Made by a program: the position numbers and the translations under genes
Part shown: one piece after another, positions 17,116 through 64,000 of the stretch
How the letters are laid out: every line of letters begins with the position of its first letter
How positions within the stretch are numbered: position 1 is the first letter of the stretch
The notes under the pieces: model-generated
Seen by the model: only the letters and a program-made list of their open reading frames with translations
What the model was told of the DNA's origin: nothing
Databases searched by the model: none
Source of the DNA: Heterodontus francisci
Taxonomy: Eukaryota
Direction of reading: 5' to 3'
Length of the DNA stretch: 64,000 nt
NCBI RefSeq assembly: GCF_036365525.1
Contig: NC_090382.1
Location: 101,924,595-101,988,594, forward strand

Positions 17116-18224
17116 GATTCCACTATCTCGTTGTGTGAACAGGTGCTGGGAGGTGAATGGGTGACACCCATATTTACTGAGCCGAGTTTCATTCCTGCTC
17201 ATTTATCGCAGCTCAGCTCCATTCAGCTCCTCTGCAGAGAGAGTCCAGCTGACTGGGACCACACAGTTACAAATCCACATCCCAACATTACAAACAACAC
17301 ACAGGCTGCTTCACTATGTCACCGCCAATCCCTACAGTTATAAAACTGTGAGCCCAGAGTGCAGCCTCACCAACCACGAGTGGAGATCAGGAATTCAGCC
17401 CAACGTCTGCATGCATTTCCATCCATTGCAATTTCATAGTGACCTGGAAAGTTAGCACTTGTAAAGTAAAATAACAGATACTGAAACTGGGAATTATTGA
17501 AACACACTTTGGGAGATAAACTAATCCAGCTCAATAAAAATATTACCAGAAAATAAATCCAGAATAAAACCACAAATCATTCCTAAAGTTTCTGAGTTGG
17601 ATTGATCTGGTTTATAAAGACTGCAGATCTCCATGGGCACAGAGATTCTGGGCTGAATGGCCTCTTTCTGTGCTGTATCATCCATTCTATGATCTCAGAT
17701 CAGTATCAGAGTTCAGGGTCTGCAATGCAACAGCTTCTTGTGAATCATCTGTTTTATTTCCTGTTGCACCGTGTGGATTCCCACTCTTCAATATCTGACA
17801 AAAGGCAAGAAATGTGCTTTAAATAAAGAGCTTTTCCTTCAATAATAAAGTGATGGATAGAAAGGAAGTTGAATTGAGGAGTAATTTTACTGAATGGGAA
17901 ATAGAGCAGAACACAACCCATACATCATTGGCTCAATATTAATGAAATAATTTCAACAGTTAAAGATTTCGGTAATTGGAAGGAACAGAGCTCTTTAAAA
18001 TTACAAACTCACTCCAGTTCCTGATAGAAATGATTGTGGAAGACTTTTCCCACAATGAAAATAGGAATGTAAAGTAGATTCACGCCAATCAGGCCAAAGG
18101 TCATGGTCAGAGTGTGACCACATTTCTAAAGAGTTCTCCCTGTGGTTCACTGACCTCACCAGTAAAGTTACCTCCTTGAACTTATGACTCAGCTTCTGAC
18201 TGAACAAGATAAGGCTGAAGCATT

Positions 18225-20683: not shown

Positions 20684-21633
20684 GTTTCCAAAGGAACAAG
20701 TTTATTTCTGAGCCGCAACTCTACTCTAGCTCTCTACTGCCACCAGGCTACCGCAGTAAGAATAACAGCATCAAAAAATATACTCAAATTGTCACAAATT
20801 ATTGTGCGATTTTCAGTTCATCGTAATTTTTACAGGTCATGCTTTCACTGTTCGAATATTATGTGATCTCAAACGGTATCTTAAACCTTCATTTAAATAT
20901 TGCACATTACACTTAAATGAATCATCAATTGATGCATTTAAATAAATCAGTTGCTCCAAAGTGGATGAAATCTTAGAGCTTTGAATATTTTTCCTGATTT
21001 TAATATCAGAAACTTCCCTGCTCCCACTTTCCATCAGGCTCAAGGAAGAAACCAGAGAAAACTTAGAGCATCATATGTCTTTATCAATGAATGGAAAATG
21101 TTCAAATTAGGAACTCAACCTTTTAATATTTTTCACAAATATTACTCTTGAAAAGTATTATCAAGAAAATTGTCAGAAAGCAATATCTGTTCAAGGAACA
21201 TCAGTTTTCTCAGTGTCAAGTGACAGTTCAGCTATAATTGCTGATTTGCTGAAAAGTTTAAAGAAATTCTTACTCTGTTCATCCTCTTCAAGCAGCAAAT
21301 TAATCCAACAGCAAGGCCCAGTTTCACAAACAAGTATGTGTCACAAACTTCCAAATGTCTGGAAGTAGTCTCACTCTCACTGTGAAGGATAAAGTTCAGA
21401 TTTGCAGTTTCACTCTCTGTCTTGTTTGATATTGAAAATTCAAGAAAAGATGTGGAAAGTGAAAACATTCTGCTTTGAACACTGGGAGTCTTAATGTCAA
21501 ATATTTGTGTCAAGACTATGTTCCAATTGATTTTTTTTTGTCGGTTTATGTGTCTGGATTTGAGTAATTTTATCAGATTCTTGTGGGTGCAACAGTTTTG
21601 AATTAAAGTGAGCAGCTCCAAGTGAATGGCAAA

Positions 21634-28862: not shown

Positions 28863-29290
28863 GAGCTGTGGCTTAATCGATAGCACTCTCTTCTGTAAAT
28901 CTTTGGGTTCAAGTCCCACTCCAGGACTTAAGCTCAAAACTCGAGGCTGACACTCCACTGCTGCACTGTTGGAGATGCTATCTTTTGGATGAGATGTAAA
29001 ACCGAGGTCCAGTCTGCCCTCACAAGTGGATGTAAAAGATTCTACTGTGTATGTCAAAGCAAAGCAGGGGAGATATTGCCGGTGTCCTGGCAAATATTTA
29101 TCCCTCAATCACCAGCACAAAAACAGATTATCTGGTCATTATCACATTGCTGTTTGTGGGAGCTTGCTGTGTGCAAATTGGCTGCCACATTTCCTACATT
29201 ACACAATGACTACACTTCCAAATTACTTCATTAGCTGTAAAGTGTTTTGAGATGTTCGGTGGTTGTGAATGGTGCTAAATAAATGTAAGT
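28863..29290 (+). mobile_element. SacSINE1-like DeuSINE
   Basis: B-box GGTTCAAGTCC; Deu-domain-like GATGTAAAAGAT; L2-type tail. Confidence 0.7.
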
Positions 29291-30490
29291 CTTTAAGTCT
29301 TTCATTTTTACTTCATGCTGCAAAGTGTACCCAAAATTATTACTCATCTTGAAGAAAAAAAATCAAAAAGGTTATGAAAGTTTAGGAGAGTACGGGTTTA
29401 CAGACACAAGGTTTAACTTTTTTTACCCTATTTTTGGTACATTTCCTACATGTTAGAATCTAGTGTGACAATGGACAGTAATTTTTTCCTTACATTTAAA
29501 AATGGAGAAATCTGAGGATTATTTTGAGAAAAGAAATCCTTGGCTATAGGGGCTAGCACCCTGAGAGAGTGGTAAGGTGCCCCTCCAATTCTTCCAGCCA
29601 CCCTCTCGGGTGGATGCACATGAGCTGCAAATAGCACAGGCCTTTGAGACAGGGACATCGCTGGGCAATACTGACTATCAGAAATCCCGCCCCCTGTGCT
29701 TCCATTATGTGTAAGAGCCTCCAAGATTTTCAATCCAGGTAACACATGGTAAGCTCTTTAAGGCTTGTTAATTAGCAAGAGTTTCACATCATATTCATGG
29801 GATTATGATGCATCCAACCTCCATAATCCCATTTTCTGGGAGGAAATGAGACAATGAAGGATGGAAAAGTCATGGGCACTGTGGTTTTTCCGCATAATAA
29901 CTTGGAGTTGAAGCCCTTCAGGGCTGCATGGCTCTGGGTAGTAGAGGGCATTCTAGGAGAAGTTTCATTTTTGGGATGCCTCTCCACAGTCACCATTGAT
30001 GAATTTGTTTGGCTGCAACCCCACTTGAGCATAAGTGTTTTGCAGTAGCTGACACCAGTTCTAATGCAATTGACACACAGCCAATTAGGCTTTCGTCGAC
30101 TCCTGAGGGGATGGATTCCTCTGGGTCATTGGACAACTCGTGTGCCTTTGTCTGTAGATGTGTTGACTAATCAGCAAGGTGGTAGCTGTAGGGGTTACAA
30201 TCTAGGGGCTGGATAGTATGTAAGATGCTGGCCCTCGACTTGAGCCTCTTTGTTGCAGGCTCCTTCTGAACAAGGGGATGACGAGTGCTACTGGGGCACA
30301 GAAGGAGTTTGCACTTCGCGGTCCCTGTCAGGCTTTGTCGAGTCTGTGAATCCTTCTAAACGCTACACCTACCCTTTAGCTCCCATCAGGAGCCAACAAA
30401 AGTGCTACATTGCATAATTGAATCATCATTGTTGGACATTACACGTCTGAGATCTTAATTGAGTGGGCAGCAAACTTATGTGAAACATTA

Positions 30491-30496
30491 TTTATT
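30491..30496 (-). terminator. Candidate polyadenylation signal of the Ig receptor gene
   Basis: AATAAA on the minus strand about 270 nt after the terminal-exon stop. Confidence 0.4.
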
Positions 30497-30759
30497 TTTC
30501 ATAAAGAAGTTGCTGTTTAACATAGATGTACAGAAGCTGTGAAAGGATTGTTGAAAGTTCATTGAGAACCACTTCTGTTGTAAGTTTTTTTCAAACATGA
30601 ACATAACTCATGAATAATAAGTATTGCAATGATTGTGTTAAATCAGAGAAATTACATAGGAAGGAAGGTCCATTTCTGTTCTCAGATAAAAATATCAGTA
30701 CCAAAAATATTATTTTCCACATATCTAACTCCAAGCTCTTCCTGCATCTCCGGTTCAGA

Positions 30760-30831
30760 TTATTTCTGATTTACTTGTGCAATTTGTGCAGAGATGACAG
30801 ATGAATCATCTTCCTTTGAATGAGCCGGGTT
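30760..30831 (-). CDS. Ig receptor terminal coding exon with degenerate ITIM (VISAQI)
   Basis: tttctctcttgtag|AAC CCG..., phase 0; NPAHSKEDDSSVISAQIAQVNQK*. Confidence 0.68.
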   Translation of the reverse strand, partial: NPAHSKEDDSSVISAQIAQVNQK

Positions 30832-33800
30832 CTACAAGAGAGAAATTAACCATTTATAATAATGTGAACTATTAATGCATCTCTTTACATCAAATACATC
30901 AGATCATGCAGCATGATCTGGACAACATTCAGGCTTGGGCTAAAAAGTGGCAAGTAACATTTGGGCAACACAAGTGCTAGGCAATGACCATCACCAAAAA
31001 AGAGAATCTAACCAGGTCCCCTTATCTTTCAATGGCATTATCTGGACCAGTCATATTAATACTGTGGCTACAAGAGCAGGTCAGAAGTTGGGAATTCTGC
31101 AGTGAGTAACTCACCTGCTGAGTCCCAAAATCCTGTCGACCATCTATCTACCAGGCACAAGTCAACAGTGTGCTGGAATACTCTCCACTTGCCTGGATGA
31201 GTACAGCTTAAACAACACTCAAGAAGCTCAACAGAATCCAAGACAAAGCAGCCTGTTTGTTTGGCACCCCATCCACCATCTTAAACATTCATTCCCTCCA
31301 CCTCTGGCGCACAGTGGCAGCAGTGTGTACTATCTAGAAGATGCACTGCAGCAACTCGCCAAGCCTCCTTCGACCACACCTTCCAAACCTGTGACCTCTA
31401 TCACCTAGAAGTACAAGGGCAACAGATGCATGGGAACACCACCACCTGCAAGTTTCCTCCAAGTCACACATCATCCTGACTTGGAACTATATTGCAGTTC
31501 CTTCACGGTCACTGGGTCAAAATCCTGGAACTCCCTTCCTAACAGCACTGTGCGTGTATCTACACCACATGGACTGCAGCTGTTCAAGAGGAAGCTCACC
31601 ACTACCTTCTCAAGGGCAATTATGAATGGGCAATATATATGGGCCTTGCCAGTGATGCTCACAAGTCATGAACGAGTAAAAAAAAACAACTTTACAAATT
31701 TGTTGCAGATATTAATATTGTATGGCGTGTGATTTCATCAGCTGGAATTGATGTACTTACAGTATCTGAAGATTGTTTATTGCGTTGAATACCATGTCTA
31801 TGCCCTGTAATAATTGCAAATATTACAATTAAAAGATAATATTGATAGATCAGACTGACAAAAAGTGACATGTAAATGTCCTCAGCTTACTGCATTTCAA
31901 ACAGAGAATGGATCGGCAAGACTTGGCAAGTCAGTGAACCAAGTTGTCCTCTGTAAGACTCAGATCCAAACGAAGCACTGCATTTACAGTGAACCATAGG
32001 GCTGGTCATAAATGAACTAAGCTCCCTGTAATACTCTGAGAGTGTGAGACTGTCATTGTCACTACAGTGTCAGAAAGCAAAGAAATTATAAACAGCAAGA
32101 GGCCATTTCATCCATTGCAGCTCGGCTGGGGTGAGTTGGTCATCTGCAGCTATCATTCTAACCCAATTTCCTGCCTTATCTCACTGACATTTTATCATAT
32201 TTATTTACTCTTTATCCTATATTACATGTTGGGCTTGACTCTCCTGGTCCTTCCAGGTGAAGCCGTGTCAAAGTGGAATCCGCCTATCCAGGCTTCAGAG
32301 TGTCTTAATACGTTTGGCCAGGCCATTAGCACGGTTTGAGTGAACGATTGTTGCAGGACTCTGGGAAACAAGCAGAGTATCAATCACATCACAGGGTTGA
32401 GAGGACTGGCAACAATGGGAAGGGCCACAGGTCTTGAGGCTTTCTGGCTGTTGACCAGCAGTCAGAGGCTTAGCTCAGGATTCCATGATTGTTGAGAGAT
32501 GACAGGACCCACTACTAGCTCACTCAGGTGCTTTTGGAAGTGGGTGCTCTTCAGATGAAAATACAGGAAAGTGAGGTTGGACCAAGCAGGAACTGCTTCT
32601 TCAGTCTTATTTTCATTGAAGCTTGGAAACAATTTTAAAGGAATGGAGGTCCTATGTCACAGATCACCATCCTTTTTTACCAAATGCTGCTCAAGCCATA
32701 GTCCCCAAAGGACCATAGGCATTTCTCCTCATTAGAGAGAGACAGATGGCAATGTACAGGTAGAGGGTCACCACTCCTCAAGCATGGGGCATGGTGAGGA
32801 GGTAGGCCTCCATGAACTACCACAGCCAGTACAGGGATTTAACCCACACTGTTGTTTTTTCTTTCTGCATCACGCTATAGCCATCTAGCCAACTGAGCTA
32901 ACCAACTTATTTTGGACTGCGAAAACCCGGCGAATACGTATTTCCTGGCTACTGTTGAAAAATTAGCTTTATTTATATCAATTCGAGAAGAATTTTCATA
33001 GTGTTTTTCACCTCCTCAGGTTCTCCCAAAGCAACTGAAACACATTGATCGTTTCGTCAACTGTTCCAGGGAATTAATGTCCATAAATGCAACATTCCCT
33101 CTGCAGCAAGCAGAGGTAAGCCTGAGCCAAGCTGGCAGTCTGAAGGCTGAAACATGTTTCCTTCGACATTACATGTGCAATATTTGATGTGATATGATTT
33201 AAGAATGTCAGAAGTTTTCCTTTTATTGTGGTTCCATATTGCTAATAACTTCAACATTAAGTTCAAAAATTGTCACAATAAATGCTCATCTTTCACGTCA
33301 CATTTTTTCCAGAAAAAAAGTTCCAATTGGAAAGATACTACCAATTCCATTAATAAAAATGCAATGTCACCAAGATTTATTGTCTGTGCAGGAGAATGCA
33401 CTTGTCATAAGGGCCCTAAATCATCCTACAATGTTTTTTACATTTGTTCTGAGGATGTGGATGATCCTGGTTCAGTCACATTTATTACCATCTCTGGTTA
33501 CCCTAAGAAGGCAATGGATATTCTTCTTGAAGCAATTATACACTTCAGAGAACAGTTAACCACAAAGTGTGGATTTCATTAATATTTGAATAAAGCTGAG
33601 GTGCCTCTTCTGTATTTTCCCCTCGTTGCAGAGGTTTCTGTCTTTGATTCCCTGAACCTATTCAGACAGAAATCGCCCATTAACACGTGTTCAGCTTTCC
33701 TTATAAGGAATGCAGTGTAGAATGATGCCTGGACTTCAAGGGTTAAATTACAAGGAGTGATCACACAGACTAGTGTTGTATTCCTTGGAATTTAGAAGGT

Positions 33801-36800
33801 TAAGGGGTGATTTGATAATTTGAGTGTAGTTTTAAAGATTTTAATGGGAATTGATTGGATAGAGAGAAACTATTCGCTGTGGTTGGGGAGTCTCAGACTC
33901 GGGGCATAGCCTAAAATTTAGAGTTTAAAATTTATATTAAGCTTTTGGCCGCCAGTCCAAATATCTCCATATAATATAAAAACAAGAAATGCTGGAACCA
34001 CTCAGCAGGTCTGGCAGATTCTGTGGAAAGAGAAGCAGAGTTAACGTTTCAGGTCAGTGATCCTTCTTCGGTCAGATTTGGGAATCATGTGCCACATTCA
34101 CATTTTATTACATGTATCAGACTTGAAATTGAACGCAGCAATTTACATATCTTACCTGCAACCTTGCACTTTCTTAGACTCAGTACCAGTGCCAGGATAA
34201 TGATGAGGAGAAGAGCCAGACTTCTAAAAATAGCAACATTGGTATGTTTGAAAGTGGAACGACCTGTCAGAAGAATAAGCACAGATTTCACATTTAGTTA
34301 ATAGATTAAGGGCTAGAAATTGGTTCGCTCTGAGTTGCGGGCAGAGGGGCCATGATGCATAACCTGCTGCAGTTGTTGGAAACGAGGTGGGCAGCATGTA
34401 AAATTTGTGCACTAAATCCCCCAATTTCCCTGACTGTAGCAAAGCCATGAGCAGCTCCCGTGCTGAACTGGTCTCCGTTGCACTGCCTGGACCATCTACG
34501 CACCGCAGGGAGACGAGTAGCATTCTGAAGAAACCACATGCTCCAGGCAGCCTTCCTTTTTTAAAAGCGCAGTCCCTATAAAAGGGAAGTCGCAGAAATG
34601 CACTGCAGGCTCCTGGATAACTACTCTGAAGCACTCAGAGAGAAGGAAAATGGTGCACGACATCAAAGAAGGGGCTCCTTGCTTTAGTGACGCCACTCTG
34701 GATGCACTGGTTAGAAAGGTGAAGGCCAGGAAGGAAGCTGTGTTTCCACTGAGAGGCAGGCAGCTTTCACAATTGACCTTCGGTAGGGAATGGGATTATG
34801 TGACAATGGCAGTTAATGCCCAGAGTGTGACGCCCAGGACATGGCAACAGTGACGAAAGAAGTTTAATAACCTCATTTGGATAGTTAAGGTGCGTGAATG
34901 CATCTGCACGTCTGAGTTCACACCCACCACACTACCCACAACACAATCCACATCTCACGGTGATCAACACACCCCACCCCCAATACTCCTGCAGCAACAC
35001 GCCCTGACACTGAGAACGCACCGCTCTCATCCTTACACTAACCTCACCCACACATGTCTTCCAATCATGCCAGCCACATACACACCTGTACAAGCCTCCA
35101 CAAACCTACAGCTATTCAGCTATAGCAGGCAGCTCACCCAAACACAGTGACACACAGTCACTGACATTCTACCCTCTCTTTTGTAGGAGAAGGTCACCAA
35201 CAACAGGTAGGAGACTCACAGGACTGGCAGATGACCAGCACAGAATTATTGGGACCAATGCCATGAAGCCAGTGACACTCAGCGCTGCCAAGGCCATTGA
35301 TGATGATGATGATGCTGCCTTATGCACCTTTTCCGCTGACTCCTGCTATGAAATGGAAATTGCAAACTGTGAACCTCCTGCTTTCCTCCCAACCCTCCCC
35401 TCCCCTTCTGCTTTTGTGCTTTGAGATTATCAAGAATTACCACCTGGTCAGTCAATGCAGCCTCATGAGGAAGGGCCAGAGCAACAGCTGACCTCTGAAG
35501 AAGAAGCAACATCACTTGAGGATGTAACTAGTGGGATGGATAAGGGGGAAGCAATGTGTATTTGGATTTCAGTTTCTCCCTATTTACTCTGTCCAGACCA
35601 CTCATAATTTTGAATACCTCTGTCAAATCTACTCTCAACCTTCTCTTCTCTAAGGAGAACAGTCCCATCTTTGCCAATCTATCCAAATAACTGAAGTTTC
35701 TCATCCCTGGAACTATTCCTATAAACCTGTCCTGCACCCTCTCCAAGGCCTTCACATGCTTCTTACAGTGTGGTGCCCAGAATTGGACACAATACTCCAT
35801 TTGCAGCTGAACCAGTGATTTATAAATGTTCACCATAACTTCCTTGCTTTTGTGCTGGTGTTGACCAAGATTGTGTCATCGCATCAACATTCTTCTCCAT
35901 CTTCCTCACTGCAATTTTGCACCTCACCTCCAGCAAGCCCGCCACAGGAGCAGTGATAACTTACAGGATGGACAGGAAATTATTCAACCTCCGTCACCTC
36001 CACTCCAAAATCAAAGCTCACACTAAGCTCAGTCATTGAGCTTCAGTATGCGGACGATGTTTGTGTATGTGCTCACTCAGAGACTGAGCTGCAAGTCATC
36101 ATTGACTCCTTCACTGAAGCATACGAGAGGATGGGTCGTACTTTAAACATCCAGAAGACTGAGGTCCTCTTCCAACCCACTCCCACAGTACAGCATCATC
36201 CCCCACCAACTAGGATCCACAGTGAAACCCAGTAAATGTGGACCAATTTCTCCAGAGTCTCCCCTCAACGAAGGCAGACATAGATGAGGAAGTCCACCAG
36301 CACCTTTAGTGTGCCAGCTCTGCTATTGGCTGACTGAGGAAGAAAGTATTTGAGACCTCAAACCCAGGACGAAGGTCGTGACATATTGGGTAGCAGCGAT
36401 CCCTGTGCTCCTATATGTTTCTGATACAATCTATAGCAGCTATCTCCAGGCACTGGAGAAATCTCATCAACGCTGTCTCCACAAGATCCTTCACATGCGT
36501 TGGTAGGAGAGGCGGTCTAATGTCAGTACCCTCTCCCAAGACAACATTCCCAGCATCGAGGTGCTCATCACCCAAAACCTGCTTCGCTGGGCGGGTCACG
36601 TCACTCACATGTCTAACACCAGGTTCCCAAAGCAACTGTTCGACTCTGAGCTTTGCCGCAGCAAAAGACTCCCAGGAGAACAGTGGAAACACTTTAGGGA
36701 CGTTCTCAAAGCATTCCTGAAGAAATCCAACATACCCACCAAATCACAGGTGTCCCTGCCCCTCAACTGGATGGCACAGTGGCGCAGTGGTTAGCACCGC

Positions 36801-42800: not shown

Positions 42801-45800
42801 CAAAGATTCCTTACGGAAGTATAATGGACCTAAAAGACTTTTTTTTGCATTTATTCATTTTCAATCCTCTCCGTAGCTTCGAGCTGTTTCGTTTGACTTT
42901 TTGATGTTTATATATGCAGACCTATCCTGTGAACTCTTAATAATGTGGAGTGCAACAGAATAAGAAGTTATCATAATTAAAGAGTATTAAGTGACCAGAA
43001 TTGTCTTTGAAAATGACAAGCAAAATCTGAGAGACTTACTGTTAAACTTCAGATAATATGGAATTAAAACCTTGGGTGTGTTTTGATGAAATAAAACACA
43101 GGTCCAGTTCTCTCTGTCTCTATCGGTTTTCTGAATAATCAGCTGTAAAACATCCTCTTCCTGTTTTTGTTCCTTCAATGTTTTCTCTGCAACAGTTTTG
43201 CCATCACTACTGATCCAAACAAGTCTCATTGATTCAGTGACATCAGAGACAGAGCAGGTCAGGGTAACAGTGTCTCCCTCAGTCACTGCATCAGGTGGTT
43301 CAGTTGTGACTGTGGAAACAAGAAAATCATTTAGATTTTAAACAATAACATGATCATTTAAAACCATGGGAACATTCTGTCTCCTACCTTTAACTGTGAT
43401 TAGTTTGATGGTCACAAAATTATATGATCCCAGAGAACATGTGTAAATTCCTGAATCTTCAAACAATACAGGGACAATCTGCACATTGAAGTTGTTGCCA
43501 TTAAAGTTTGTTTCGGTGGGCACCAGTCGACTCCCAAAGTAGGTCCTGTTTATATTGATAGGCTCAGATCTGTAAGTAGAAGCTATTTCTTCTTTTTGAT
43601 TCTGAAAATAACGTGATGACCAGGTCCATTTAGTTTCAGTGTAATCAGATTGAACTTCACAACTTAGGTAGAGTTCACTGTGATCCGTGACTGACCGATA
43701 AAGTGTGTATATTTTGTTGTGTAACTCTGCAATAGACAGACAGGAAACAAGATGTTAGATTTTTATAGTTCCTGAGATACAGATGTTGTAAATTTCCACA
43801 GGACCAAACAGCGTCCTCCTGGTATGTCAGCTGGGAGTGCAGCATTAGGACAGGGAAATCGGCTGGGACCTGGATACACTGGCTGCTGGCCCAGGCTGAT
43901 AGTTCTTTAAATGTCAGGTTGCAAGTCCATCTGCCTTAAATATGGCTCAGTCAAAGTGATATTTCTCCATGGACAGTAGATTTGTTAAACTGTCTCAGCA
44001 ATTAATTATCAACAAATGCCTCATTCCCATTGTATTGGTACATCTGGTCCCATTGTGAATAGGAGGTCAAATAGAGACGGAATCATTGATGGCCTGAATG
44101 GTCTCCTTCTATGCTATTATGACTCGATGACTCTATGACATCGGCAGGTCCATCAAAGAGTGCAATGTCAGTCTAGCTTGATAGAGAAAGGAGCAAGGGG
44201 AAGCTTTGACTAATTTCTGAACTCCAGCAGGTCGGAGGTTCATTCGGAGTTAATTTGTTTAGGTTAATTAGTTGACCCACTGGTTTGGAACAGTGAGGCA
44301 TGTTCATTATTTTGAACTTATGCACAAATACAGGTAATACTGATTAAACTAAGTGAATCCGATCATAACTGTTATTCTGTATGTTCCCTTGCTGTGAAAT
44401 AAAGCACTTAAACTGACTTTGTCTCACCAAGGATTTTTTAGGCTGTCTTCAAAAAATACTAAAGATGCATGTGCGATAGACACAAATATCCAGTTTAGAT
44501 CACAGGGGAATCTTATTCTTACACCCCAGGCTGTGCCATCACATAATCAGTCATTGGGCAGTATGAGATTAACCCTGAATGTAAGATGCTCAGACCATTT
44601 TAGTGAGTGACCAGCACCACTGTACCCAAGAGAATGTTTCAGGAATGACCCTAATCTTTTAACATCAGTGTTGGGTGCCTTTAATTTGTTTGTATTTCTC
44701 TATTCCAATGTCGACTGGAAAGGCATTTCCTTTATTCAATTGATGGATTTTATTCTTTTTGATTCACAAACATGAATTGAAATGAATCCATTGAATTCAC
44801 CTGATTGGTTACATCAGTTCTTAATGTCCCCATTTTATATTTACACCCATGTTCCAGGGTAAAAACAAGGACCACATTCTGCAGTAAATCCCACAGTGGT
44901 TTCTGTGCTCACTGTACTTTGTGTGTAACAGTTTTATATTAGTTATTATTTAATACTGCAAGGTAGCTCTGGACTTACCCAGATCCACATCAACATTTGT
45001 GTTTCCACTGAGAACAATGGAGTCATTTTCATGCACTTCCCATGTATATAAATTCTGATTCTCTGCTCCAACTTGTCTGACTATCAGATAGACTGTGTTA
45101 TTCAGATGGATCTCATCAGTGTTGTTCCTCCTGTTCTGCTGAGATGAGTCTCTTGGTTTCCAGTGAAGACTGACTGTATCTGAGAGTTTGGAGATGGTAC
45201 AGCTGAGGGTGATGTCACTGCCTATTCCAGGCCTCTGTGAATCTGTCTCAACTGTAAAAAACAGATAAATGAAGCTTAGAATTCTCAATAAGTGTTCTGA
45301 ACTATTGCATTCAGAACTTTCTTTTTTTTACAAAGACACAGTGGTGGGAATTTTATTTCAATGTGAGGGTGGGAACGGGGCGGATGGTCATTTAACCCAC
45401 CCCCCGTATGGGCATGCTGTCTTCCCGACACAAAACCAACACACTCAATGTTTAAAAAGCTCCACCAAGAGCCGGAGGAGACAATCCGCCCGAGATCGAT
45501 GATTGGTCACTTAGACCTCTTAGCGAGCTTGTTGTTTGTTGTTTGTTGACCATTTTGAATTTTCTTTGTAGGCTCAGGATCCACACAGGGTCTCAAACCA
45601 CAACAGGGAGGAGAAGTTGCAAACACAATGGAGAGACAACAGCAAGAGGCACCATTAAAGAGAGAAGGCTCAGAAAAGGCCCTCATTCACAGGCAGTCAG
45701 TTTTATAGAGACAGGAGAATTATCTGTCCTGTTACTTCGCTCTTGACAAGGACATTGGGTGGGAGGCGATTGCTTTAGAGGGTGTGGACGGTCCCTTCTG

Positions 45801-51800: not shown

Positions 51801-54800
51801 ACCTCCAGACAGGCCTTCTCAGTCATCCTTGTCGGCTTCTTCTGGTGCAGACATGGAATGCGATGCTTCTCTGGGCCGTCACCAGCACCAGAAGTACCTC
51901 AAGTAAGGCACGCGAAAAACAGAGGGTTACCCTGGCACGCGGGCCCTCCCTACACACTGCCCTCTGCTCAGCTTCTCCTTGCAACATGGAGATGAACAGT
52001 GACCACATCAATGGCTGCCGCTCATCGTTTAAATCAGGCCTGCTCATCCCTGTGTCCCGCCTCATTCCTGCGTCCGCCGCTGCTAATTTGGTGGCGAATG
52101 TGATGCCAGGCTAATTAACTGGCTTTCCAGTTAAAACTGCAACATGTGCACATTGCCAATGCGGTGCAGGGTCGGGACCCGGAAATAAACGCGATGTTGA
52201 GGTCCTGACCCCGGAATTGAAATCCCACAAAGTCAGAGAAATACTGAGCAGCTGTGCTTAGTGCTGACAATTAACATTTCCCAGATAATGTTCACTTGTT
52301 GCCATTAGCCCCCTCCTGTTAATTCTGTATCTATTGTTTAGTGTTATGCAGGTGGAGGGTGTTAACTGGGGTCTTACTTCAACGCTTCTGAGGAGAGTCT
52401 TACTGAGACAAGTGAAGGAGTTGAGTGAGGAGCGACATGTTTGTACTCCTTTTACTCTGTACGATAAATGTGAAACTGAGTAAAGATTGGCTCTCGCATT
52501 ATCCTTCAACAACAACCTCCTCCCTCCTCTTCCTCCTGTACATCTGATCCATGGCAGTATCATTCAAAGACGTATATTCACATGCAAATTCCTGACACCC
52601 AAATCTATCTCTACACTATCTCTCTCACACCTTCCATTGCCTCTGTGTTGTCTGATTGCTTATCCAACATCATGTCTTGGATGAGCCACAATTTCCTCCA
52701 GTTCAAGATCTGGAAGACTAAAGTCATCATCTTCGGCTCTTACCAGCAACTCCATACTGTCACCATCAGCTCCATCACCCTCCATGGCCATTGTCTCAGG
52801 AATTTTACGAGAATGGACAAAAGATTGGGAAAAAATACAAATGTTACCAATCAAAACTACTCACCCTTTGTGCATCCACTAATTCTAATGCACAGAGGAT
52901 TTTCACTGATCTGTCTGTTTCCAGTGAGAGATTCATTCTGGGCTGGGTGATAGAACTGAAGGATCATGACATGATCCCAACATTCTGTTAGGAATATTAG
53001 TGGAATTGCTCACAGAAAATCATATTATTGAACCCTTTCTAGTCCTTGTCCTACTTACCTTTGATCCCAAATACTTCAAACTGTTTCAGGATTTTTTTAC
53101 TGGGTTGTGTCTGAGTCCAGGTGAACAAGCCCGCAAGTTCAAAGGTGGGCTTTCTGATTCTCAGATTAAGGGTACCCCAGTCCTCACGTATCCTCTGAGA
53201 AATGCCTGGTATATTATTGTACTTATCGCTCCATTGTACAGCCCATCGCTGATCTTCGCTGTGAAAGGTACCCAATTGATATGTAGTTTGTTGCCCTGAG
53301 TGTGGTCTCCATTCCAACACAATGGGACCATTTCCAGGATTTTCTGGTCCTTTCAATACAAAGTTCCCTTCCTGATGTAAAAAATAAATATAACTTGGGA
53401 ATCCTGCAAGGAAAGAATAACAAACATTTTAGAATCAGACAGCAAATTTTTAATCTGACCTGTGTAATTATTCATCCTGTAGACAATTTGTTTTCAGTAA
53501 ATTGTTATTGATGATACAGTTCAGACATGCTACAGCACATACACACCAGAGTAAAATGCTGTATAGCTGAAAGAGCAAAGGTCACCTTCCTAAAGATACA
53601 CTTATTAGAATGGATTGTGATTTCTCCCAGCTCCCAAAGTTTAAAAAAAAAGAATTCCCCCACATTTATATAGCAATTTTAATAGAAAATAACTTTACAA
53701 CACTTTACAAACTGTGGAAAAATATAAAAGGATTTAGAGAGAATAAACACAACAACTTGAAATGTACCGCATCATTAACATGTTAAAATGCCTCATGCTG
53801 CTTCCCAGGAGTGTTATCACTCAAAACCTGAAACCGAGTGACATCGAGAGATATTAGCGCAGACGAACTAAAGCTGATCAAAGAAGTCGGTTTTACAGAG
53901 GGTCTTAAAGGGCAAAAACTAGGTAAAGAGGCAGAGAAGTTTAGAGAGGGAATTCTAGAGCTCAGGGTTTCGGCAGCTGAAAGCACAGCCACCAATGGTG
54001 GAGCAATTTAAATCGGGGCAGTTCAAGAGGCCGGAATTAGATGTGAGCAGATCAAGCGGACGGTTGTGGGGCAGGTGGAGATTAATTAGAAAGGGAGCAG
54101 CAAAGCTATGGAGACATTTGAAAACTTTAATATCAAGGTGCTGCTTAACCTGTAGCCAGATCAATGAGCACAGGGGTGATTGGATGAACGGCATTTGTTG
54201 TGAGTTAGGACACAGGCAGCAGAGTTTGGATGGCCTGAAGTTTACAAAGGGAAGAATGTGGAAGGCCGATCAGGAGTGCATTGGAATAGACAAGTCTATG
54301 AGGTAGCAAAGGCTTTCATGAGGGTTTCAGCAGCAGATGAGATGAGGCAAGGACAGCGTCAGGTGATGTTCCGGAAGATGAAAAGACCATCTTAGTGATG
54401 GTGTGGATGTGTAGGCGGCAGCTCAGCTCAGGGTCAAATATGAAACCAAAGTTGCAAAGAGTCTGCTTCAGCGTCAGACAGTTGCCAGGGAGATAGATGG
54501 AGTTGGTACCTATGGAATGGAGTTTGTTGCGGGACCAAAGACAATGACCAGTACTGGATGTTGGACAAGAAGTCTGATAACTTAACAACCATGAAGGAGT
54601 CAAGATTTATAGTCGTAAGATAGAGCTGGGTGAAAAACTGAGTTTTCGGATAATGGCGCCAAAGGGCTGTACGTTGATGAGAAATAGAAGGGGGGGGGGG
54701 GGTCAAGGATAAATCCTTTGGGGACACAGGAGGTAAAGGTACGGGAGTGGGATAGGAAGCCACTGCTGATGATACCCAGGCTCTGATTAGATCAATAAGA

Positions 54801-57800: not shown

Positions 57801-60800
57801 TTTCTCAGTTTCTAAAAGTACACAGAATTCTTAGCTTTCATCTTCAGACCTCTCGTCTCACTGTCTTCATTGTGATCTTTGATAACAAATGCAAACCCTA
57901 ACCCAAAATCAAGGCAGCCTCTGCCTCCTGTGCTCACTCACGTCCCCCATCTTACACGCTTCTTTGTAATCCAAGGAGTAGATGAGGAAGACATTTGTTG
58001 ATCTCCAAAGGGTTACTAAGGTAAGTGGGTTCACACTTTGCCTTCATTTACAATCTTAACCTTCGAATGTGGATGATCAGCCTTCACTGCAAACTTGATG
58101 GAGCATCAAGGTGGGAAAATCAGACAACTTTTCACACACTTTCCAAATGCATATTAACATTGTAAAATCTAGCAGACTGTCAGCACAAGATATTCTGTAG
58201 ACTGCTTGTTCACACATTCATGTAAGCAGGATGCTTGGCTTGGCTCTAGAGTAATATTGTCTCTGCTTCTCCCAATTCTAACTGATGTGGCTTTTATAAC
58301 TGCTTACAGGAGGCTGCACGTGCGAACAGATTTGTATCTGAAGGGGACCTCCCAACCACTGCTCACTGACTCTGAGTAAATTCAGCAATTCTGTGCTTCC
58401 AGTAACAGCATAACGGGAAGAAGGAAAATCATTTGATCTGAAACCCCGTGAACATTTTTATCCTTCCCATGATCTGCCTGTGGATTTCCCAAGTGAGCTA
58501 ATTTACAGATATTATAATGAGTGCTCATGGCTCTGCAGCCTCGCGTTCCCTGCTTTTGTAAAAAAAGAAAGATTTGCATTTATATCGCACCTTTCATTAC
58601 CACTGGATGTCTCAATGCACTTTACAGTCAACAAAGCACAAATGAAGTTTAGTACTGTAGGAAACGTGGCAGCCAAATTGCGCACAGCAAGCTCCCACAG
58701 ATGACAATGTGATAATGACCAGATGATCTGTTTTTGTGATGTTGATTGTTTGATAAATACTGGCCGGAATACTGTGGATAGCCCACTTGCTCTTCTTCGA
58801 AATAGTGCTATGGGATCTTTTACGTCCACCTGAGAGGGCAGACTGGGCCTTGGTTTGACATCTCATCTGAAAGACAGCGCCTCTGACAGTGCAGCTCTCC
58901 CTCAGTATTGGACTGGGGTGTCAGCCTTGATTTTTGTGCTCAAGTTGTAGTGTGTGTTACACTCACAATACACGAGCCTTCAGTTAGAATGAGAGTTATG
59001 AGGTACAGATGTTTCTGTTGGGTTGTTGGGTTTGTATTAGTCATGATGTAGAGCATTCTAGAGAAAGTCTTAGACTCAGGTAAACGTTCACTGACAATTC
59101 TTTATCATTTACAGTTACTATATATATTCACCATAAGCCACATAAGATAACATCTTTCGTGCTGCTATACCTTCTTCTTCTCAAGCTTATCTCCTGTGAA
59201 TTACATCATCACTCGAACAATGGGAAGGATCTCTCTCACTGTCTTTGGTATTAACCCTTTACATCCTTATACTACAGTGTCCAGGATCAGCTGAGGCAGA
59301 CAGAGAGGTTTCTCAGAATGAAGAATGGAGACTTCCAATTCCAATGTTTGCAGCTGGCAATTATTTTTTACTGTGGTTATTTTGGGCATTTTGTCTTGGA
59401 ATTCTGATTTTATTTTTATTTGTTTCATGTGATGTGGGTGTCGCTGGCTAGCGCAGCATTCATTGCCCATCCCTAATTGCCCTTGAGAAGGTGGTGCTGA
59501 GCTGCCTTCTTGAACTGCTGCAGTCCTTGTAGTTACACCAACAGTGCTGTTAAGAAGGGAGTTCAGGATTTTGACCCAGCGATAGTGAAGAATGGAGATA
59601 TAGTTCCAAGTCAGGATAATGCAGGTGCTGGTGTTCCCATGCATCTGCTGCCCTTGACCTCTTAGGTGGTAGAGGTCGCGGGTTTGGAAGGTGCTGTCGA
59701 AGGAGCTTTGGTGAGTAGCTGCAGTGCACCTTGCAGATGGTACACACTACTGCCACTGTGCGTTGGTGGTGGAGCTCATGAAGGTTGAAGATGATGGATC
59801 TGGTGCCAATCAAGGGAGCTGCTTTGTCCTGGATGGTGTTGAGCTTCTTGAGTGTTGTTGGAGCTGCAGCCTTCCAGGCAAGTGGAGAGTATTCCATCAC
59901 ACTCCTGACTTGTGCCTTGTAGCTGGTGGACAGGCTTTGGGGAGTCAGGAGGTGAGTTACTCACCACAGGATTTCTAGCATCTGACCTGCTCTTGTCGCC
60001 AGAGTATTTATGCAGCTGGTCCAGTTCAGCTTCTGGCCAATGGAACTCCCAGGAAGTTGATAGTGGGGGATTCAGCAGTGATAATCAAGGGGACATGGTT
60101 TTCTCTTGTTTGAGACAGTCATCGCTTCGCTTGGCACTTGTGTGGTGCAAATGTTACTTGCCATTTATTAGCCCAAGCGTGGAGGTTGTCCAGGTATTGC
60201 TGCATATGGACATGGGCTGTTTCAGCATCTGAGGACTTGTGAATGGTGCTGAACATTGTGCAATCATAAGTGAACATCCCTACTCCTGACCTTATGATGA
60301 AGGGAAGGTGATTTATGAAGCAGTTGAAGATGGTTGGACCTCGGACACTGCCCTGAGGAATTCCTGCAATGATGTCCTGCAATGGAGATGATTGACGTCC
60401 AAAAACCACAACCATCTTCCTTTGTGCTAGGTATGATTCCAACCAGCAGCATGTTTTCCCTCGGATTCCCATTTCCTCCATTTTTATGGTCAGAAAAGAA
60501 TGGAACTGGTTCCATTTTTCTGTCAAACATAAATGCTTGCTCTGTCTCAGTGAGTTTACCAACAGTCCAGTTGAGAAATACAGACCAGGAATTTCATAGC
60601 TCGCTCCAGGCTGCGCTGAATTATCTCAGGGTCAATTTTCTGAGGCTCTTTCCCACTGTAGAACCTCACACACAGGATATAAAGGAAGGCCTTAACTCCG
60701 GCAACAGGAATAATCAATGGTGACAGAACATAAAGAGCAAACCCTGAGGCACTTACCACTCGGCTCCTGATAATATGGGACTAAAACCTGGGGCCTGTTT

Positions 60801-63454: not shown

Positions 63455-64000
63455 CTGTGGAAAACAGATCAATGAGATTTAGCGTAAGTCGTGACATGTA
63501 CAATCTAATGATTAGGTTCAAACTGACCTGAGGATGTGCCCATCATCAACACTTGTACCTCGCTGCAGTAAAGACTCCCGTCAGATTATACACAACTGCA
63601 TCTTATCAGTAAAATAGCACAGTGGAGATAAAAAAAAATTCTCCATTCTCCTCCACCTGCTGGAGTGTCAAGGGTCAAGTCAAGCTTACATAGATTGGAT
63701 GGTATTTGTGGATGCCTGTACAACAATGGACAGGTGGTAGAAACTCACTGGAAGTGGGTGTGATGAAAATGAAAATGCAGTCCCCGTGTTATCTGACATG
63801 GGGAAGGCTCCAGTCCTACCCTGTACTCAATCGGAATAGAACATTTCTGTAGGACCACCCAAAACATGCACTGGGAGCCTGTGCAGAAAATCGAGAGCAA
63901 ACGTCTTCACAGCCTGAGGAGTTATTTAAATTAGTAGGTTTCTAAAATGCTCTTGAGCAGGTCTCCAACCATTGAGCTTCCATGAGGAATGGCACTTCAG

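What the first reader, a model, noticed from the sequence alone, without database searches (positions are those of the whole stretch)
30760..34263. Signs of an inhibitory-to-activating switch: TM arginine plus a Tyr-to-Ser ITIM
Seen: the TM reads VAIFRSLALLLIIILALVLSL, with Arg near the outer end (AGA, 34223-34225, one change from GGA Gly). The terminal exon encodes DDSSVISAQI, where TCT (30790-30792) is one substitution from TAT, which would give the consensus ITIM VIYAQI. Established: activating members of paired receptor families use a charged TM residue to recruit ITAM adaptors and lack functional ITIMs; LILRA/PIR-A and GPVI use an N-proximal TM Arg with FcR-gamma, and activating KIR and Ly49 derive from inhibitory ancestors. 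Inference: this gene is an activating derivative of an inhibitory paralog, which implies a paired-receptor system in a shark.
Basis: partly seen in the sequence, partly recalled or inferred. Interest (0 to 1): 0.88.

Follow-up and report, generated by a model that had tools for sequence, protein, structure and literature searches.

The report
Shark receptor copy without inhibitory tail
A horn-shark immune-type receptor gene is a very young copy of a neighbouring inhibitory receptor that has lost every inhibitory tyrosine motif and gained a membrane arginine. By sequence it looks like an "off" receptor turning into a non-inhibitory, possibly activating one, but nothing yet shows that it signals.

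Summary
On the minus strand, AGA (34223-34225) gives Arg in VAIFRSLALLLIIILALVLSL, and TCT (30790-30792) gives SSVISAQI.

The window is Heterodontus francisci. The gene is already in RefSeq as an "uncharacterized protein" (XP_067900062-66), an eight-Ig-domain receptor. A second gene on the same chromosome (XP_067900054-60) is 99-100% identical over most of the ectodomain.

- **Homologs:** in 44 of 46 collected proteins with this end motif the residue is Tyr. The TM position is G, V, A or T everywhere else.
- **Further loss:** the window copy also lacks two tyrosine-motif tail exons and the splice donor of its first tail exon.
- **Direction:** all four TM/tail substitutions are derived and nonsynonymous.

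Derivation from an inhibitory paralog and loss of the inhibitory motifs are therefore well supported. "Activating" is not shown:
- The Arg codon has no support outside the assembly. RNA-like contigs show only the paralog's Gly.
- No adaptor could be tested.
- The family's evident activating members use a different, Lys-bearing TM exon. A frameshifted relic of one lies 9 kb downstream.

The scan had already noted this eight-Ig family on neighbouring DNA.

The parts
34156..34263 (-). TM exon (108 nt, phase 1 to phase 1): SRSTFKHTNVAIFRSLALLLIIILALVLSLRKCKVA
   Evidence: Canonical acceptor and donor. RNA-like contigs join it to Z2 (43040) and to 33657 or 31804. Identical to P0172.
34223..34225 (-). 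AGA, Arg, fifth residue of the 21-residue hydrophobic stretch. The paralog and RNA contigs read GGA (Gly).
   Evidence: 34225 T>C in all four runs at full depth. R occurs only in this gene.
34232..34234 (-). GCT, Ala. The paralog reads GTT (Val).
   Evidence: 34233 G>A.
33570..33657 (-). First tail exon (GSGNQRQKPLQRGENTEEAPQLYSNINEI) without a splice donor. Read-through adds HTLWLTVL and stops at 33545-33547, as in RefSeq isoform X2 (P0175).
   Evidence: Acceptor used. Donor reads AATCCA|cactttgt. P0175 tail. The paralog's exon runs on as ..IQQIQ.
31761..31804 (-). 44-nt tail exon (G)HRHGIQRNKQSSDT, which sets phase 0 for the last exon
   Evidence: Joints 31803/4-34155/6 and 30831-31761; canonical sites.
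30760..30831 (-). Coding part of the last exon: NPAHSKEDDSSVISAQIAQVNQK plus stop. The 3' UTR runs on to about 30470 (AATAAA at 30491-30496).
30790..30792 (-). TCT, Ser, in place of the ITIM Tyr. The paralog reads TAT.
   Evidence: 30791 G>T; the window-type letter keeps about 426 of 1283 depth in run X1. Y in 44 of 46.
30769..30771 (-). AAT, Asn. The paralog reads AAA (Lys).
   Evidence: 30769 A>T.
43040..43309 (-). Ig exon Z2 (C2-like, with WTC in strand F), spliced to the TM exon
   Evidence: The loose end at 34263 is the reverse complement of the Z2 end.
43388..43726 (-). Ig exon Y2 (V-set)
44979..45251 (-). Ig exon X2
53060..53407 (-). Ig-like exon W2 (no Cys pair); bounds approximate
60755..61447 (-). 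Ig exons Y1 and Z1 with a short intron between them; bounds approximate
63186..63494 (-). Ig exon X1; bounds approximate. The leader and W1 exons lie beyond the window's end.
21274..21379 (-). Relic of the family's Lys-type TM exon (..YLFVKLGLAVGLICCLKRMNR). It is 106 nt where the phases require 2 mod 3, so it is frameshifted against its homologs.
17687..17794 (-). Intact tail exon of the Lys-type form (ILKSGNPHGATGNKTDDSQEAVALQTLNSDTDLRS, then stop)

Best explanation
The window holds the 3' three-quarters of a horn-shark gene for an eight-Ig-domain type I membrane receptor (RefSeq XP_067900062-66). It is a very young tandem duplicate, or a converted copy, of an inhibitory receptor gene on the same chromosome (XP_067900054-60).

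After the split, this copy's signalling end was remodelled:
- A deletion removed the end and donor of the first tail exon, together with two exons carrying the DYAEV and IHYGSV motifs.
- The last ITIM changed from VIYAQI to VISAQI.
- The TM changed from VVIFG to VAIFR.
- The main in-frame product (TM exon, 44-nt exon, last exon) has a 44-residue tail with no tyrosine at all.

Shown: it can no longer offer phosphotyrosine sites to SHP-type phosphatases.

Inferred: it still binds what its paralog binds through seven near-identical domains, while the outermost domain differs, and it acts as a non-inhibitory counterpart. Whether the Arg, four residues inside the outer end of the helix, recruits an acidic-TM ITAM adaptor is open. 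I put about 0.35 on that, and about 0.45 on a signalling-null or decaying copy.
For: - **Paralog:** it has the predicted ancestral residues and a full four-tyrosine tail.
- **Identity between the two genes**: 99-100% from Y1 to Z2, 93% in X1, about 60% in W1.
- **Polarity:** all four TM/tail differences are derived in this copy, because Heptranchias reads NVVIFGSL ... VIYAQIAQAK. Tyr is present in 44 of 46 end motifs and G/V/A/T at the TM position elsewhere.
- **Missing exons and donor:**, and the RefSeq read-through isoform P0175. In one search, paralog-type intron contigs align from 32810 or 33353 up to 33575 and then carry 330 letters that fit nowhere in the stretch laid. This is what a deletion in the window copy would give.
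- **Enrichment:** amino-acid differences are 5 times denser in the TM and tail (4/74) than in Y1-Z2 (7/640), Fisher P = 0.02. The joint chance of a TM charge plus Tyr loss is about 0.004.
- **Transcription:** window-type letters in the last exon and a perfect-match intron contig appear in run X1.
- **Membrane position:** only 16 hydrophobic residues follow the Arg before RKCK, so it must sit within the bilayer span (sequence).
Against: - The Arg codon rests on the assembly alone. All four RNA-like runs show only GGA at 34225.
- The duplication is so young (about 0.5-1.7% in introns) that an intact ectodomain frame says little about constraint.
- Four of four nonsynonymous changes is not significant by itself (P = 0.32).
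- The donor loss and the frameshifted Lys-type exon downstream look like decay.
- The family's own charged-TM members use another exon with a mid-membrane Lys.
- Mobula members combine a TM Arg with an intact ITIM.
- A 2014 survey found no FcR-gamma chain in shark data (PMC4016189).
- The two 'genes' could be divergent haplotypes placed in tandem by the assembler.
Confidence: 0.6

Rival explanations
1. Activating receptor in the strict sense. The outer-leaflet Arg pairs with the TM Asp of an FcR-gamma-, DAP12- or CD3-zeta-like ITAM adaptor, as in LILRA, PIR-A, GPVI, OSCAR, NKp46 and Fc-alpha-RI. The ITIM-less tail leaves that signal unopposed.
For: - Gain of a TM charge coincides with loss of every tyrosine motif.
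- The depth of the Arg (N-V-A-I-F-R) resembles N-L-V-R/N-L-I-R in FcR-gamma-coupled receptors (recalled knowledge).
- The family has 19 collected Lys-TM short-tail members, so cells using this family probably express an acidic-TM adaptor (inference).
- The ectodomain frame is intact.
Against: - No adaptor was tested or even retrieved.
- The Arg exon was not seen in RNA contigs.
- An Arg four residues from the interface can snorkel and be tolerated without a partner.
- The finding was chosen for exactly these features, which weakens the chance argument.
- FcR-gamma was reported absent from shark data in 2014.
Confidence: 0.35
2. Decaying duplicate. After the deletion broke the tail, the TM and tail evolved without constraint. 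Arg and Ser are two of four neutral hits in a gene on its way to becoming a pseudogene or a signalling-null decoy.
For: - The donor is lost and one isoform reads through into intron.
- There are 4 changes in 74 residues against 7 in 640.
- A frameshifted Lys-type exon lies nearby.
- The window-type TM exon is undetected in RNA contigs.
- Skipping of the first tail exon, also seen in the paralog's isoform X4, keeps the frame. The gene therefore looks intact without any selection acting on it.
Against: - Under neutrality, hitting both the ITIM Tyr and a TM position with a charge-creating change is unlikely (P about 0.004, post hoc).
- No stop or frameshift occurs in seven Ig exons.
- The last exon appears transcribed in run X1.
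Confidence: 0.4
3. The two forms are alleles or haplotypes of one locus that the assembly placed as two genes, in the manner of KIR3DL1/S1. Alternatively, the two codons are assembly errors.
For: - Divergence of 0.5-1.7% in introns is in the range of divergent immune haplotypes.
- Both forms appear in one sample.
Against: - RefSeq annotates two genes with different leaders and about 60% identity in the first domain.
- Scan notes place related genes 62-123 kb away on the same piece (unchecked).
- At least eleven amino-acid differences plus a structural deletion separate the copies, which is far too many for base errors.
- The Ser letter is seen in RNA-like contigs.
Confidence: 0.1

Closest known systems
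Activating KIR and Ly49 derived from inhibitory ancestors; LILRA/PIR-A, GPVI, OSCAR, NKp46, Fc-alpha-RI (outer-TM Arg with FcR-gamma)
   Same: A near-identical ectodomain paired with an inhibitory relative. One base change creates a basic TM residue. ITIMs are lost through tail shortening and point change. The Arg lies near the outer end of the helix.
   Different: No sequence relationship to the LRC families. Eight Ig domains. The outermost domain is only about 60% identical between the partners. Adaptor pairing is untested. This comparison rests on recalled knowledge.
Siglec-5/14 and Siglec-11/16 pairs kept alike by gene conversion (PMC5701461 listed; title and abstract only)
   Same: Tandem partners with almost identical ectodomain exons but opposite-type TM and tail ends.
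   Different: Those activating partners have a proven DAP12 link. Here identity covers the membrane-proximal seven domains rather than the ligand-binding tip.
Bifunctional receptors with a TM Arg plus an ITIM tail (chicken CHIR-AB, KIR2DL4)
   Same: Mobula members of this family carry a mid-TM Arg and an intact terminal ITIM. A TM Arg in this TM exon type is therefore not unique to the window gene.
   Different: The window gene has lost the ITIM, and its Arg lies seven residues nearer the outer end of the TM.
CD4/LAG-3 family, B7 family (PD-L1, CD276)
   Same: The ectodomain unit is a four-domain cassette whose Y-Z pair is V plus C2. The C2-like Z domains carry the W-x-C motif in strand F, which PMC10768021 calls typical of CD4/LAG-3 D2 and D4. 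The best matches among solved structures are PD-L1 and LAG-3.
   Different: The matches are marginal (E 5e-8 to 1e-3). The cassette is doubled to eight domains. The tails carry ITIMs of the VxYxxI kind, not Cx(C/H) or FxxL(D/E).

Membership tests
Activating member of a paired receptor family (adaptor-coupled) | Ectodomain closely similar to that of an inhibitory partner | tested here: met
   P0172 against P0174: 99-100% from Y1 to Z2, 93% in X1, but only about 60% in the N-terminal W1 domain.
Activating member of a paired receptor family (adaptor-coupled) | Basic residue within the TM helix | tested here: met
   Arg is at position 5 of 21 and only 16 hydrophobic residues follow it. It is present only in the assembly and the RefSeq models built on it; RNA contigs do not confirm it.
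Activating member of a paired receptor family (adaptor-coupled) | Short cytoplasmic tail without ITIM or ITSM | tested here: met
   The isoform X1 tail has 44 residues and no Tyr. The read-through isoform X2 keeps only LYSNI, which is not an ITIM.
Activating member of a paired receptor family (adaptor-coupled) | Physical and functional association with an ITAM adaptor that has an acidic TM residue | not testable with these tools
Activating member of a paired receptor family (adaptor-coupled) | Expressed as mRNA and protein | tested here: inconclusive
   Window-type last exon and intron contigs appear in run X1. The window-type TM exon appears in none of the four runs.
ITIM-bearing inhibitory receptor | At least one (I/V/L/S)xYxx(I/V/L) motif in the tail | tested here: not met
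   VISAQI replaces VIYAQI. The exons with DYAEV and IHYGSV are absent from the window.
Unnamed chondrichthyan multi-Ig receptor family (RefSeq 'uncharacterized protein') | W-X-Y-Z Ig cassette, phase-1 exons, and either an ..RKCK-type or a GYLxVKL-type TM exon | tested here: met
   57 library hits to the Y exon. 116 proteins from sharks, rays, skates and chimaera. Exon phases. TM types.
CD4/LAG-3 family | V-C2-V-C2 ectodomain with WxC in strand F of the C2 domains, and a Cx(C/H) or (F/Y)xxL(D/E) tail motif | tested here: inconclusive
   WxC is present in the Z domains (WTC, WIC). LAG-3 matches are marginal. The tail motifs are absent. No tree or synteny test was done.

The most novel reading that the evidence does not exclude
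The locus catches an inhibitory-to-activating conversion in progress in a cartilaginous fish. A copy no more than a few million years old has shed three tyrosine motifs and gained an adaptor-recruiting Arg. It sits inside an undescribed, chondrichthyan-wide CD4/LAG-3-like receptor family that also holds dedicated Lys-TM activating members. If so, paired receptors with adaptor coupling, and their repeated re-invention, date back to the base of jawed vertebrates.
Probability: 0.25. Interest if true: 0.7.

Novelty: new member of a known kind. Interest (0 to 1): 0.5.

Why it matters
Paired activating and inhibitory receptors are thought to arise again and again under pathogen pressure. Most documented cases are in mammals, birds, frogs and bony fish. 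They are also old enough that the order of the steps has been lost.

This pair differs by only about 1%, so each step can be read: a deletion of exons, Tyr to Ser, and Gly to Arg. Each step can also be reverted one at a time in an assay. The pair also points to a large receptor family in sharks and rays that no paper in my searches describes. If the Arg has no partner, the locus is simply a young duplicate losing its tail, which is ordinary.

Tried and rejected
1. **RNA letters as alleles or assembly errors.** I first read the Gly/Tyr letters in the RNA-like contigs this way. I rejected it once RefSeq showed a second gene with exactly those residues.
2. **Non-canonical joint 33570/31806 (CA..AC).** This is not real splicing of this copy. 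The contigs come from the paralog, whose first tail exon is 99 nt (..IQQIQ) and ends in AG. The aligner placed that AG on the window's acceptor.
3. **Hybrid origin.** I tested whether the gene has the 5' end of a Lys-type gene. Its leader and W1 are about 60-65% identical to members of both TM types alike, so there is no support.
4. **Membership in CD4/LAG-3.** There is only marginal sequence similarity plus the WxC motif, so I did not file the gene there.
5. **Transcript-derived protein fragments carrying the Arg.** The search by the 68-residue frame around the TM exon was blank. A blank says little.
6. **Literature**. No paper on this family and no shark ITAM-adaptor report turned up. One 2014 survey found no FcR-gamma in shark data.
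I could not fetch the paralog's DNA, so there is no dN/dS, no breakpoint sequence and no check of the tandem layout.
8. **Spliced model.** The only joined translation was a local frame check, and it reproduces the C-terminus of P0172.


Full report
**1. The observation**

The gene lies on the minus strand.
- One search shows gtt gct att ttt AGA agt ctg ..., that is VAIFRSLALLLIIILALVLSL followed by RKCK. AGA is at 34225-34223.
- One search shows gat gat tca tct gtc atc TCT gca caa att ..., that is DDSSVISAQI. TCT is at 30792-30790 and a TAA stop is at 30762-30760.

**2. Gene model**

Open frames and Pfam scans show Ig exons at 63.5, 61.4-60.7, 45.3, 43.7 and 43.3 kb. tblastn with relatives adds one at 53.4-53.1 kb. 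All have phase-1 borders with canonical sites.

Laying the contigs of four runs from one sample on 29000-34999 gave these spliced joints:
- A loose end at 34263 that is the reverse complement of the Z2 exon end (43040).
- 34156 to 33657.
- 34156 to 31804.
- 31761 to 30831.

One 778-nt contig spans the last exon, a 44-nt exon (31761-31804), the first tail exon and the TM exon. The runs are labelled only as probable RNA. The spliced joints and depths far above intron level show that they contain mRNA.

The TM exon ends in phase 1. Spliced directly, TM to last exon would hit a stop after eight codons.

**3. Identity of the gene**

A library-wide HMMER search with the Y2 exon found only 57 relatives. 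A word-based search with one of them found 116 proteins from sharks, rays, skates and a chimaera. Nearly all are named "uncharacterized protein".

One cluster from Heterodontus francisci holds two genes on one 122-Mb chromosome: XP_067900054-60 and XP_067900062-66.
- The second gene matches the window exactly. It ends ..KHTNVAIFRSLALLLIIILALVLSLRKCKVAGHRHGIQRNKQSSDTNPAHSKEDDSSVISAQIAQVNQK (P0172).
- The first gene has ..NVVIFGSL.. and a long tail: GSGNQ..LYSNINEIQQIQ, EDNETLVPETSSFADYAEVNQKAK, EDNTEREDIHYGSVIFQEKAQ, GHRHG..SSVIYAQIAQVKQK (P0174).

**4. What the RNA-like contigs show**

In one search the high-depth contigs differ from the window at four exonic places:

| Place (+ strand) | Change | Effect, window to contig |
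|---|---|---|
| 34225 | T>C | Arg to Gly |
| 34233 | G>A | Ala to Val |
| 30791 | G>T | Ser to Tyr |
| 30769 | A>T | Asn to Lys |

These are exactly the paralog's residues. The contigs are therefore the paralog's mRNA, laid here because it is more than 95% alike.

This also explains the odd CA..AC joint between 33570 and 31806. The paralog's first tail exon is 99 nt and ends in ..AG, and the aligner put that AG on the window's acceptor.

Is the window's own copy transcribed?
- In run X1, window-type letters at 30791 and 30769 keep about 426 of 1283 depth.
- In the same run, a perfect-match intron contig (33229-33382, depth 11.2) sits beside a paralog-type one (depth 20.8).
- At the TM exon, only the paralog's letters appear in all four runs.

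The Ser codon is therefore seen outside the assembly and the Arg codon is not. I could not resolve this with the one read-laying run allowed.

**5.
- The two middle tail exons of the paralog, with DYAEV and IHYGSV, have no counterpart anywhere in the window.
- The first tail exon has no donor: AATCCA|cactttgt. This agrees with the scan note s1-872441 and with RefSeq isoform X2, which reads through to ..NEIHTLWLTVL, then stop.
- Paralog-type intron contigs align from 32810 or 33353 up to 33575. They then carry 330 letters that fit nowhere in the stretch laid.

Together these fit one deletion in the window copy, running from inside the first tail exon to a point upstream of 33575.

Skipping that exon keeps the frame. 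The resulting product, isoform X1, has a 44-residue tail without any tyrosine.

**6. Direction and weight of the changes**

Across the collected family, the end motif has Tyr in 44 of 46 proteins. The two exceptions are isoforms of this gene. The residue aligned with the Arg is G (15), V (3), A (2) or T (1) everywhere else. Heptranchias reads NVVIFGSL and VIYAQIAQAK. All four changes therefore happened in this copy.

The two genes compare as follows:

| Region | Identity or differences |
|---|---|
| W1 (outermost domain) | about 60% identical |
| X1 | 93% identical |
| Y1 to Z2 | 99-100% identical; 7 differences in about 640 residues |
| TM and tail | 4 differences in 74 residues |

The contrast between the last two rows gives an odds ratio of 5.2, P = 0.02.

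Enumerating all single-base changes of the ancestral 222 coding bases gives these figures:
- 3.4% create a charged residue in the TM core.
- 0.9% remove the Tyr.
- With four hits, both happen with P about 0.004.
- Four of four nonsynonymous has P = 0.32.

The first P value is post hoc, and the finding was chosen for these features. I treat it as suggestive only.

**7. The family already has charged-TM members**

Nineteen collected proteins end in ..GYL(L/F)VKL.. with a short tail. Twenty have the ..RKCK-type TM, most with ITIM tails. A split into ITIM-tailed members and charged-TM, short-tailed members therefore exists across elasmobranchs, independent of this gene.

The window itself holds a Lys-type TM exon at 21274-21379 and its tail exon at 17687-17794. 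They lie 9.4 kb downstream of the last exon, with no Ig exon between. The TM exon is 106 nt where the phases need 2 mod 3, so it is frameshifted against its homologs. Its use was not tested.

Mobula members carry a mid-TM Arg together with an intact VIYVQI. A TM Arg therefore does not by itself mark an activating member in this family.

**8. Reading**

Shown by sequence:
- This is a separate, very young copy.
- It has derived changes in the TM and tail.
- It has no tyrosine motif left in the main in-frame product.

Inferred:
- It can no longer recruit SHP-type phosphatases.
- It likely still binds through seven near-identical domains.
- Its Arg lies inside the bilayer span, since only 16 hydrophobic residues follow it. 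That is the depth typical of FcR-gamma-coupled receptors (recalled knowledge).

Not shown: any adaptor, any signalling, or transcription of the Arg exon. A 2014 survey found no FcR-gamma in shark data (PMC4016189). That survey used older and sparser data.

My odds:

| Reading | Probability |
|---|---|
| Adaptor-coupled activating receptor | about 0.35 |
| Signalling-null or decaying copy | about 0.45 |
| Artefact or allelic | about 0.1 |

**9. Relation to known families**

By sequence the ectodomain is nearest to the V-C2 pairs of PD-L1 and LAG-3, at marginal E-values. The Z domains carry the W-x-C motif that PMC10768021 describes as typical of CD4/LAG-3 D2 and D4.

Scan notes on neighbouring DNA (s1-872036, s1-872338) reached the same family-level reading and place related genes 62-123 kb away. 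These are unchecked AI notes. I verified only that the family exists and that a four-tyrosine paralog exists.

I found no paper on the family.

**10. Limits**
- Exons were searched singly by reference. No joined model went to a search tool.
- The local joined translation served only to check the frame.

Noticed in passing
window 21274-21379 and 17687-17794 (minus strand): A Lys-type TM exon (..YLFVKLGLAVGLICCLKRMNR) and its intact tail exon lie 9.4 kb downstream of the ITIM-type last exon, with no Ig exon between. The TM exon is 106 nt and frameshifted against its homologs. A cryptic acceptor (..tttggaag|tt) would restore the frame. This could be the relic of an activating gene or of an alternative 3' end.
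   Followed up: partly
proteins P0003, P0058, P0059, P0103 (Mobula): These members have an Arg in the middle of the ..RKCK-type TM (VVALRLIIIL). P0003, P0058 and P0103 also keep an intact terminal ITIM (VIYVQI), a layout like chicken CHIR-AB or KIR2DL4. P0059 ends earlier and lacks that motif.
   Followed up: no
P0172 against P0174 (window gene against its paralog): Identity is a mosaic: about 60% in the leader and W1, 93% in X1, and 99-100% from Y1 to Z2. This suggests either gene conversion over most of the gene or fast divergence of the outermost, probably ligand-binding, domain.
   Followed up: partly
window 43040-43309 and 60755-61050 (Z exons): The C2-like Z domains carry W-x-C in strand F (WTC, WIC), the motif described for CD4/LAG-3 D2 and D4. 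The X domains have Y-x-C, or Y-x-W in X2, which lacks the second Cys (LYTWEV).
   Followed up: partly
P0167 and P0170 (RefSeq isoforms of both genes): In these RefSeq isoforms the TM-exon sequence is read out of frame, so the protein ends ..NTPKVVPLSNIPMLLFLEVWLFSSSLSWHWY with no normal TM or tail. This is predicted for both paralogs.
   Followed up: no
window 31000-31800 and 33800-34200: Contig depth is 10,000 to 200,000 in all four runs, with many loose ends at 33976. These are transposon fragments inside the introns, with copies elsewhere in the window, transcribed from many loci. They are not part of the gene's mRNA.
   Followed up: no
window 34225 against 30791, run X1: Window-type letters are present in the last exon at about one third of the depth but are absent at the TM exon in the same run. 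This is unexplained. Possible causes are transcripts without the TM exon or covering only the 3' end, contig filtering, or the Ser/Asn letters also occurring in an allele of the paralog.
   Followed up: partly
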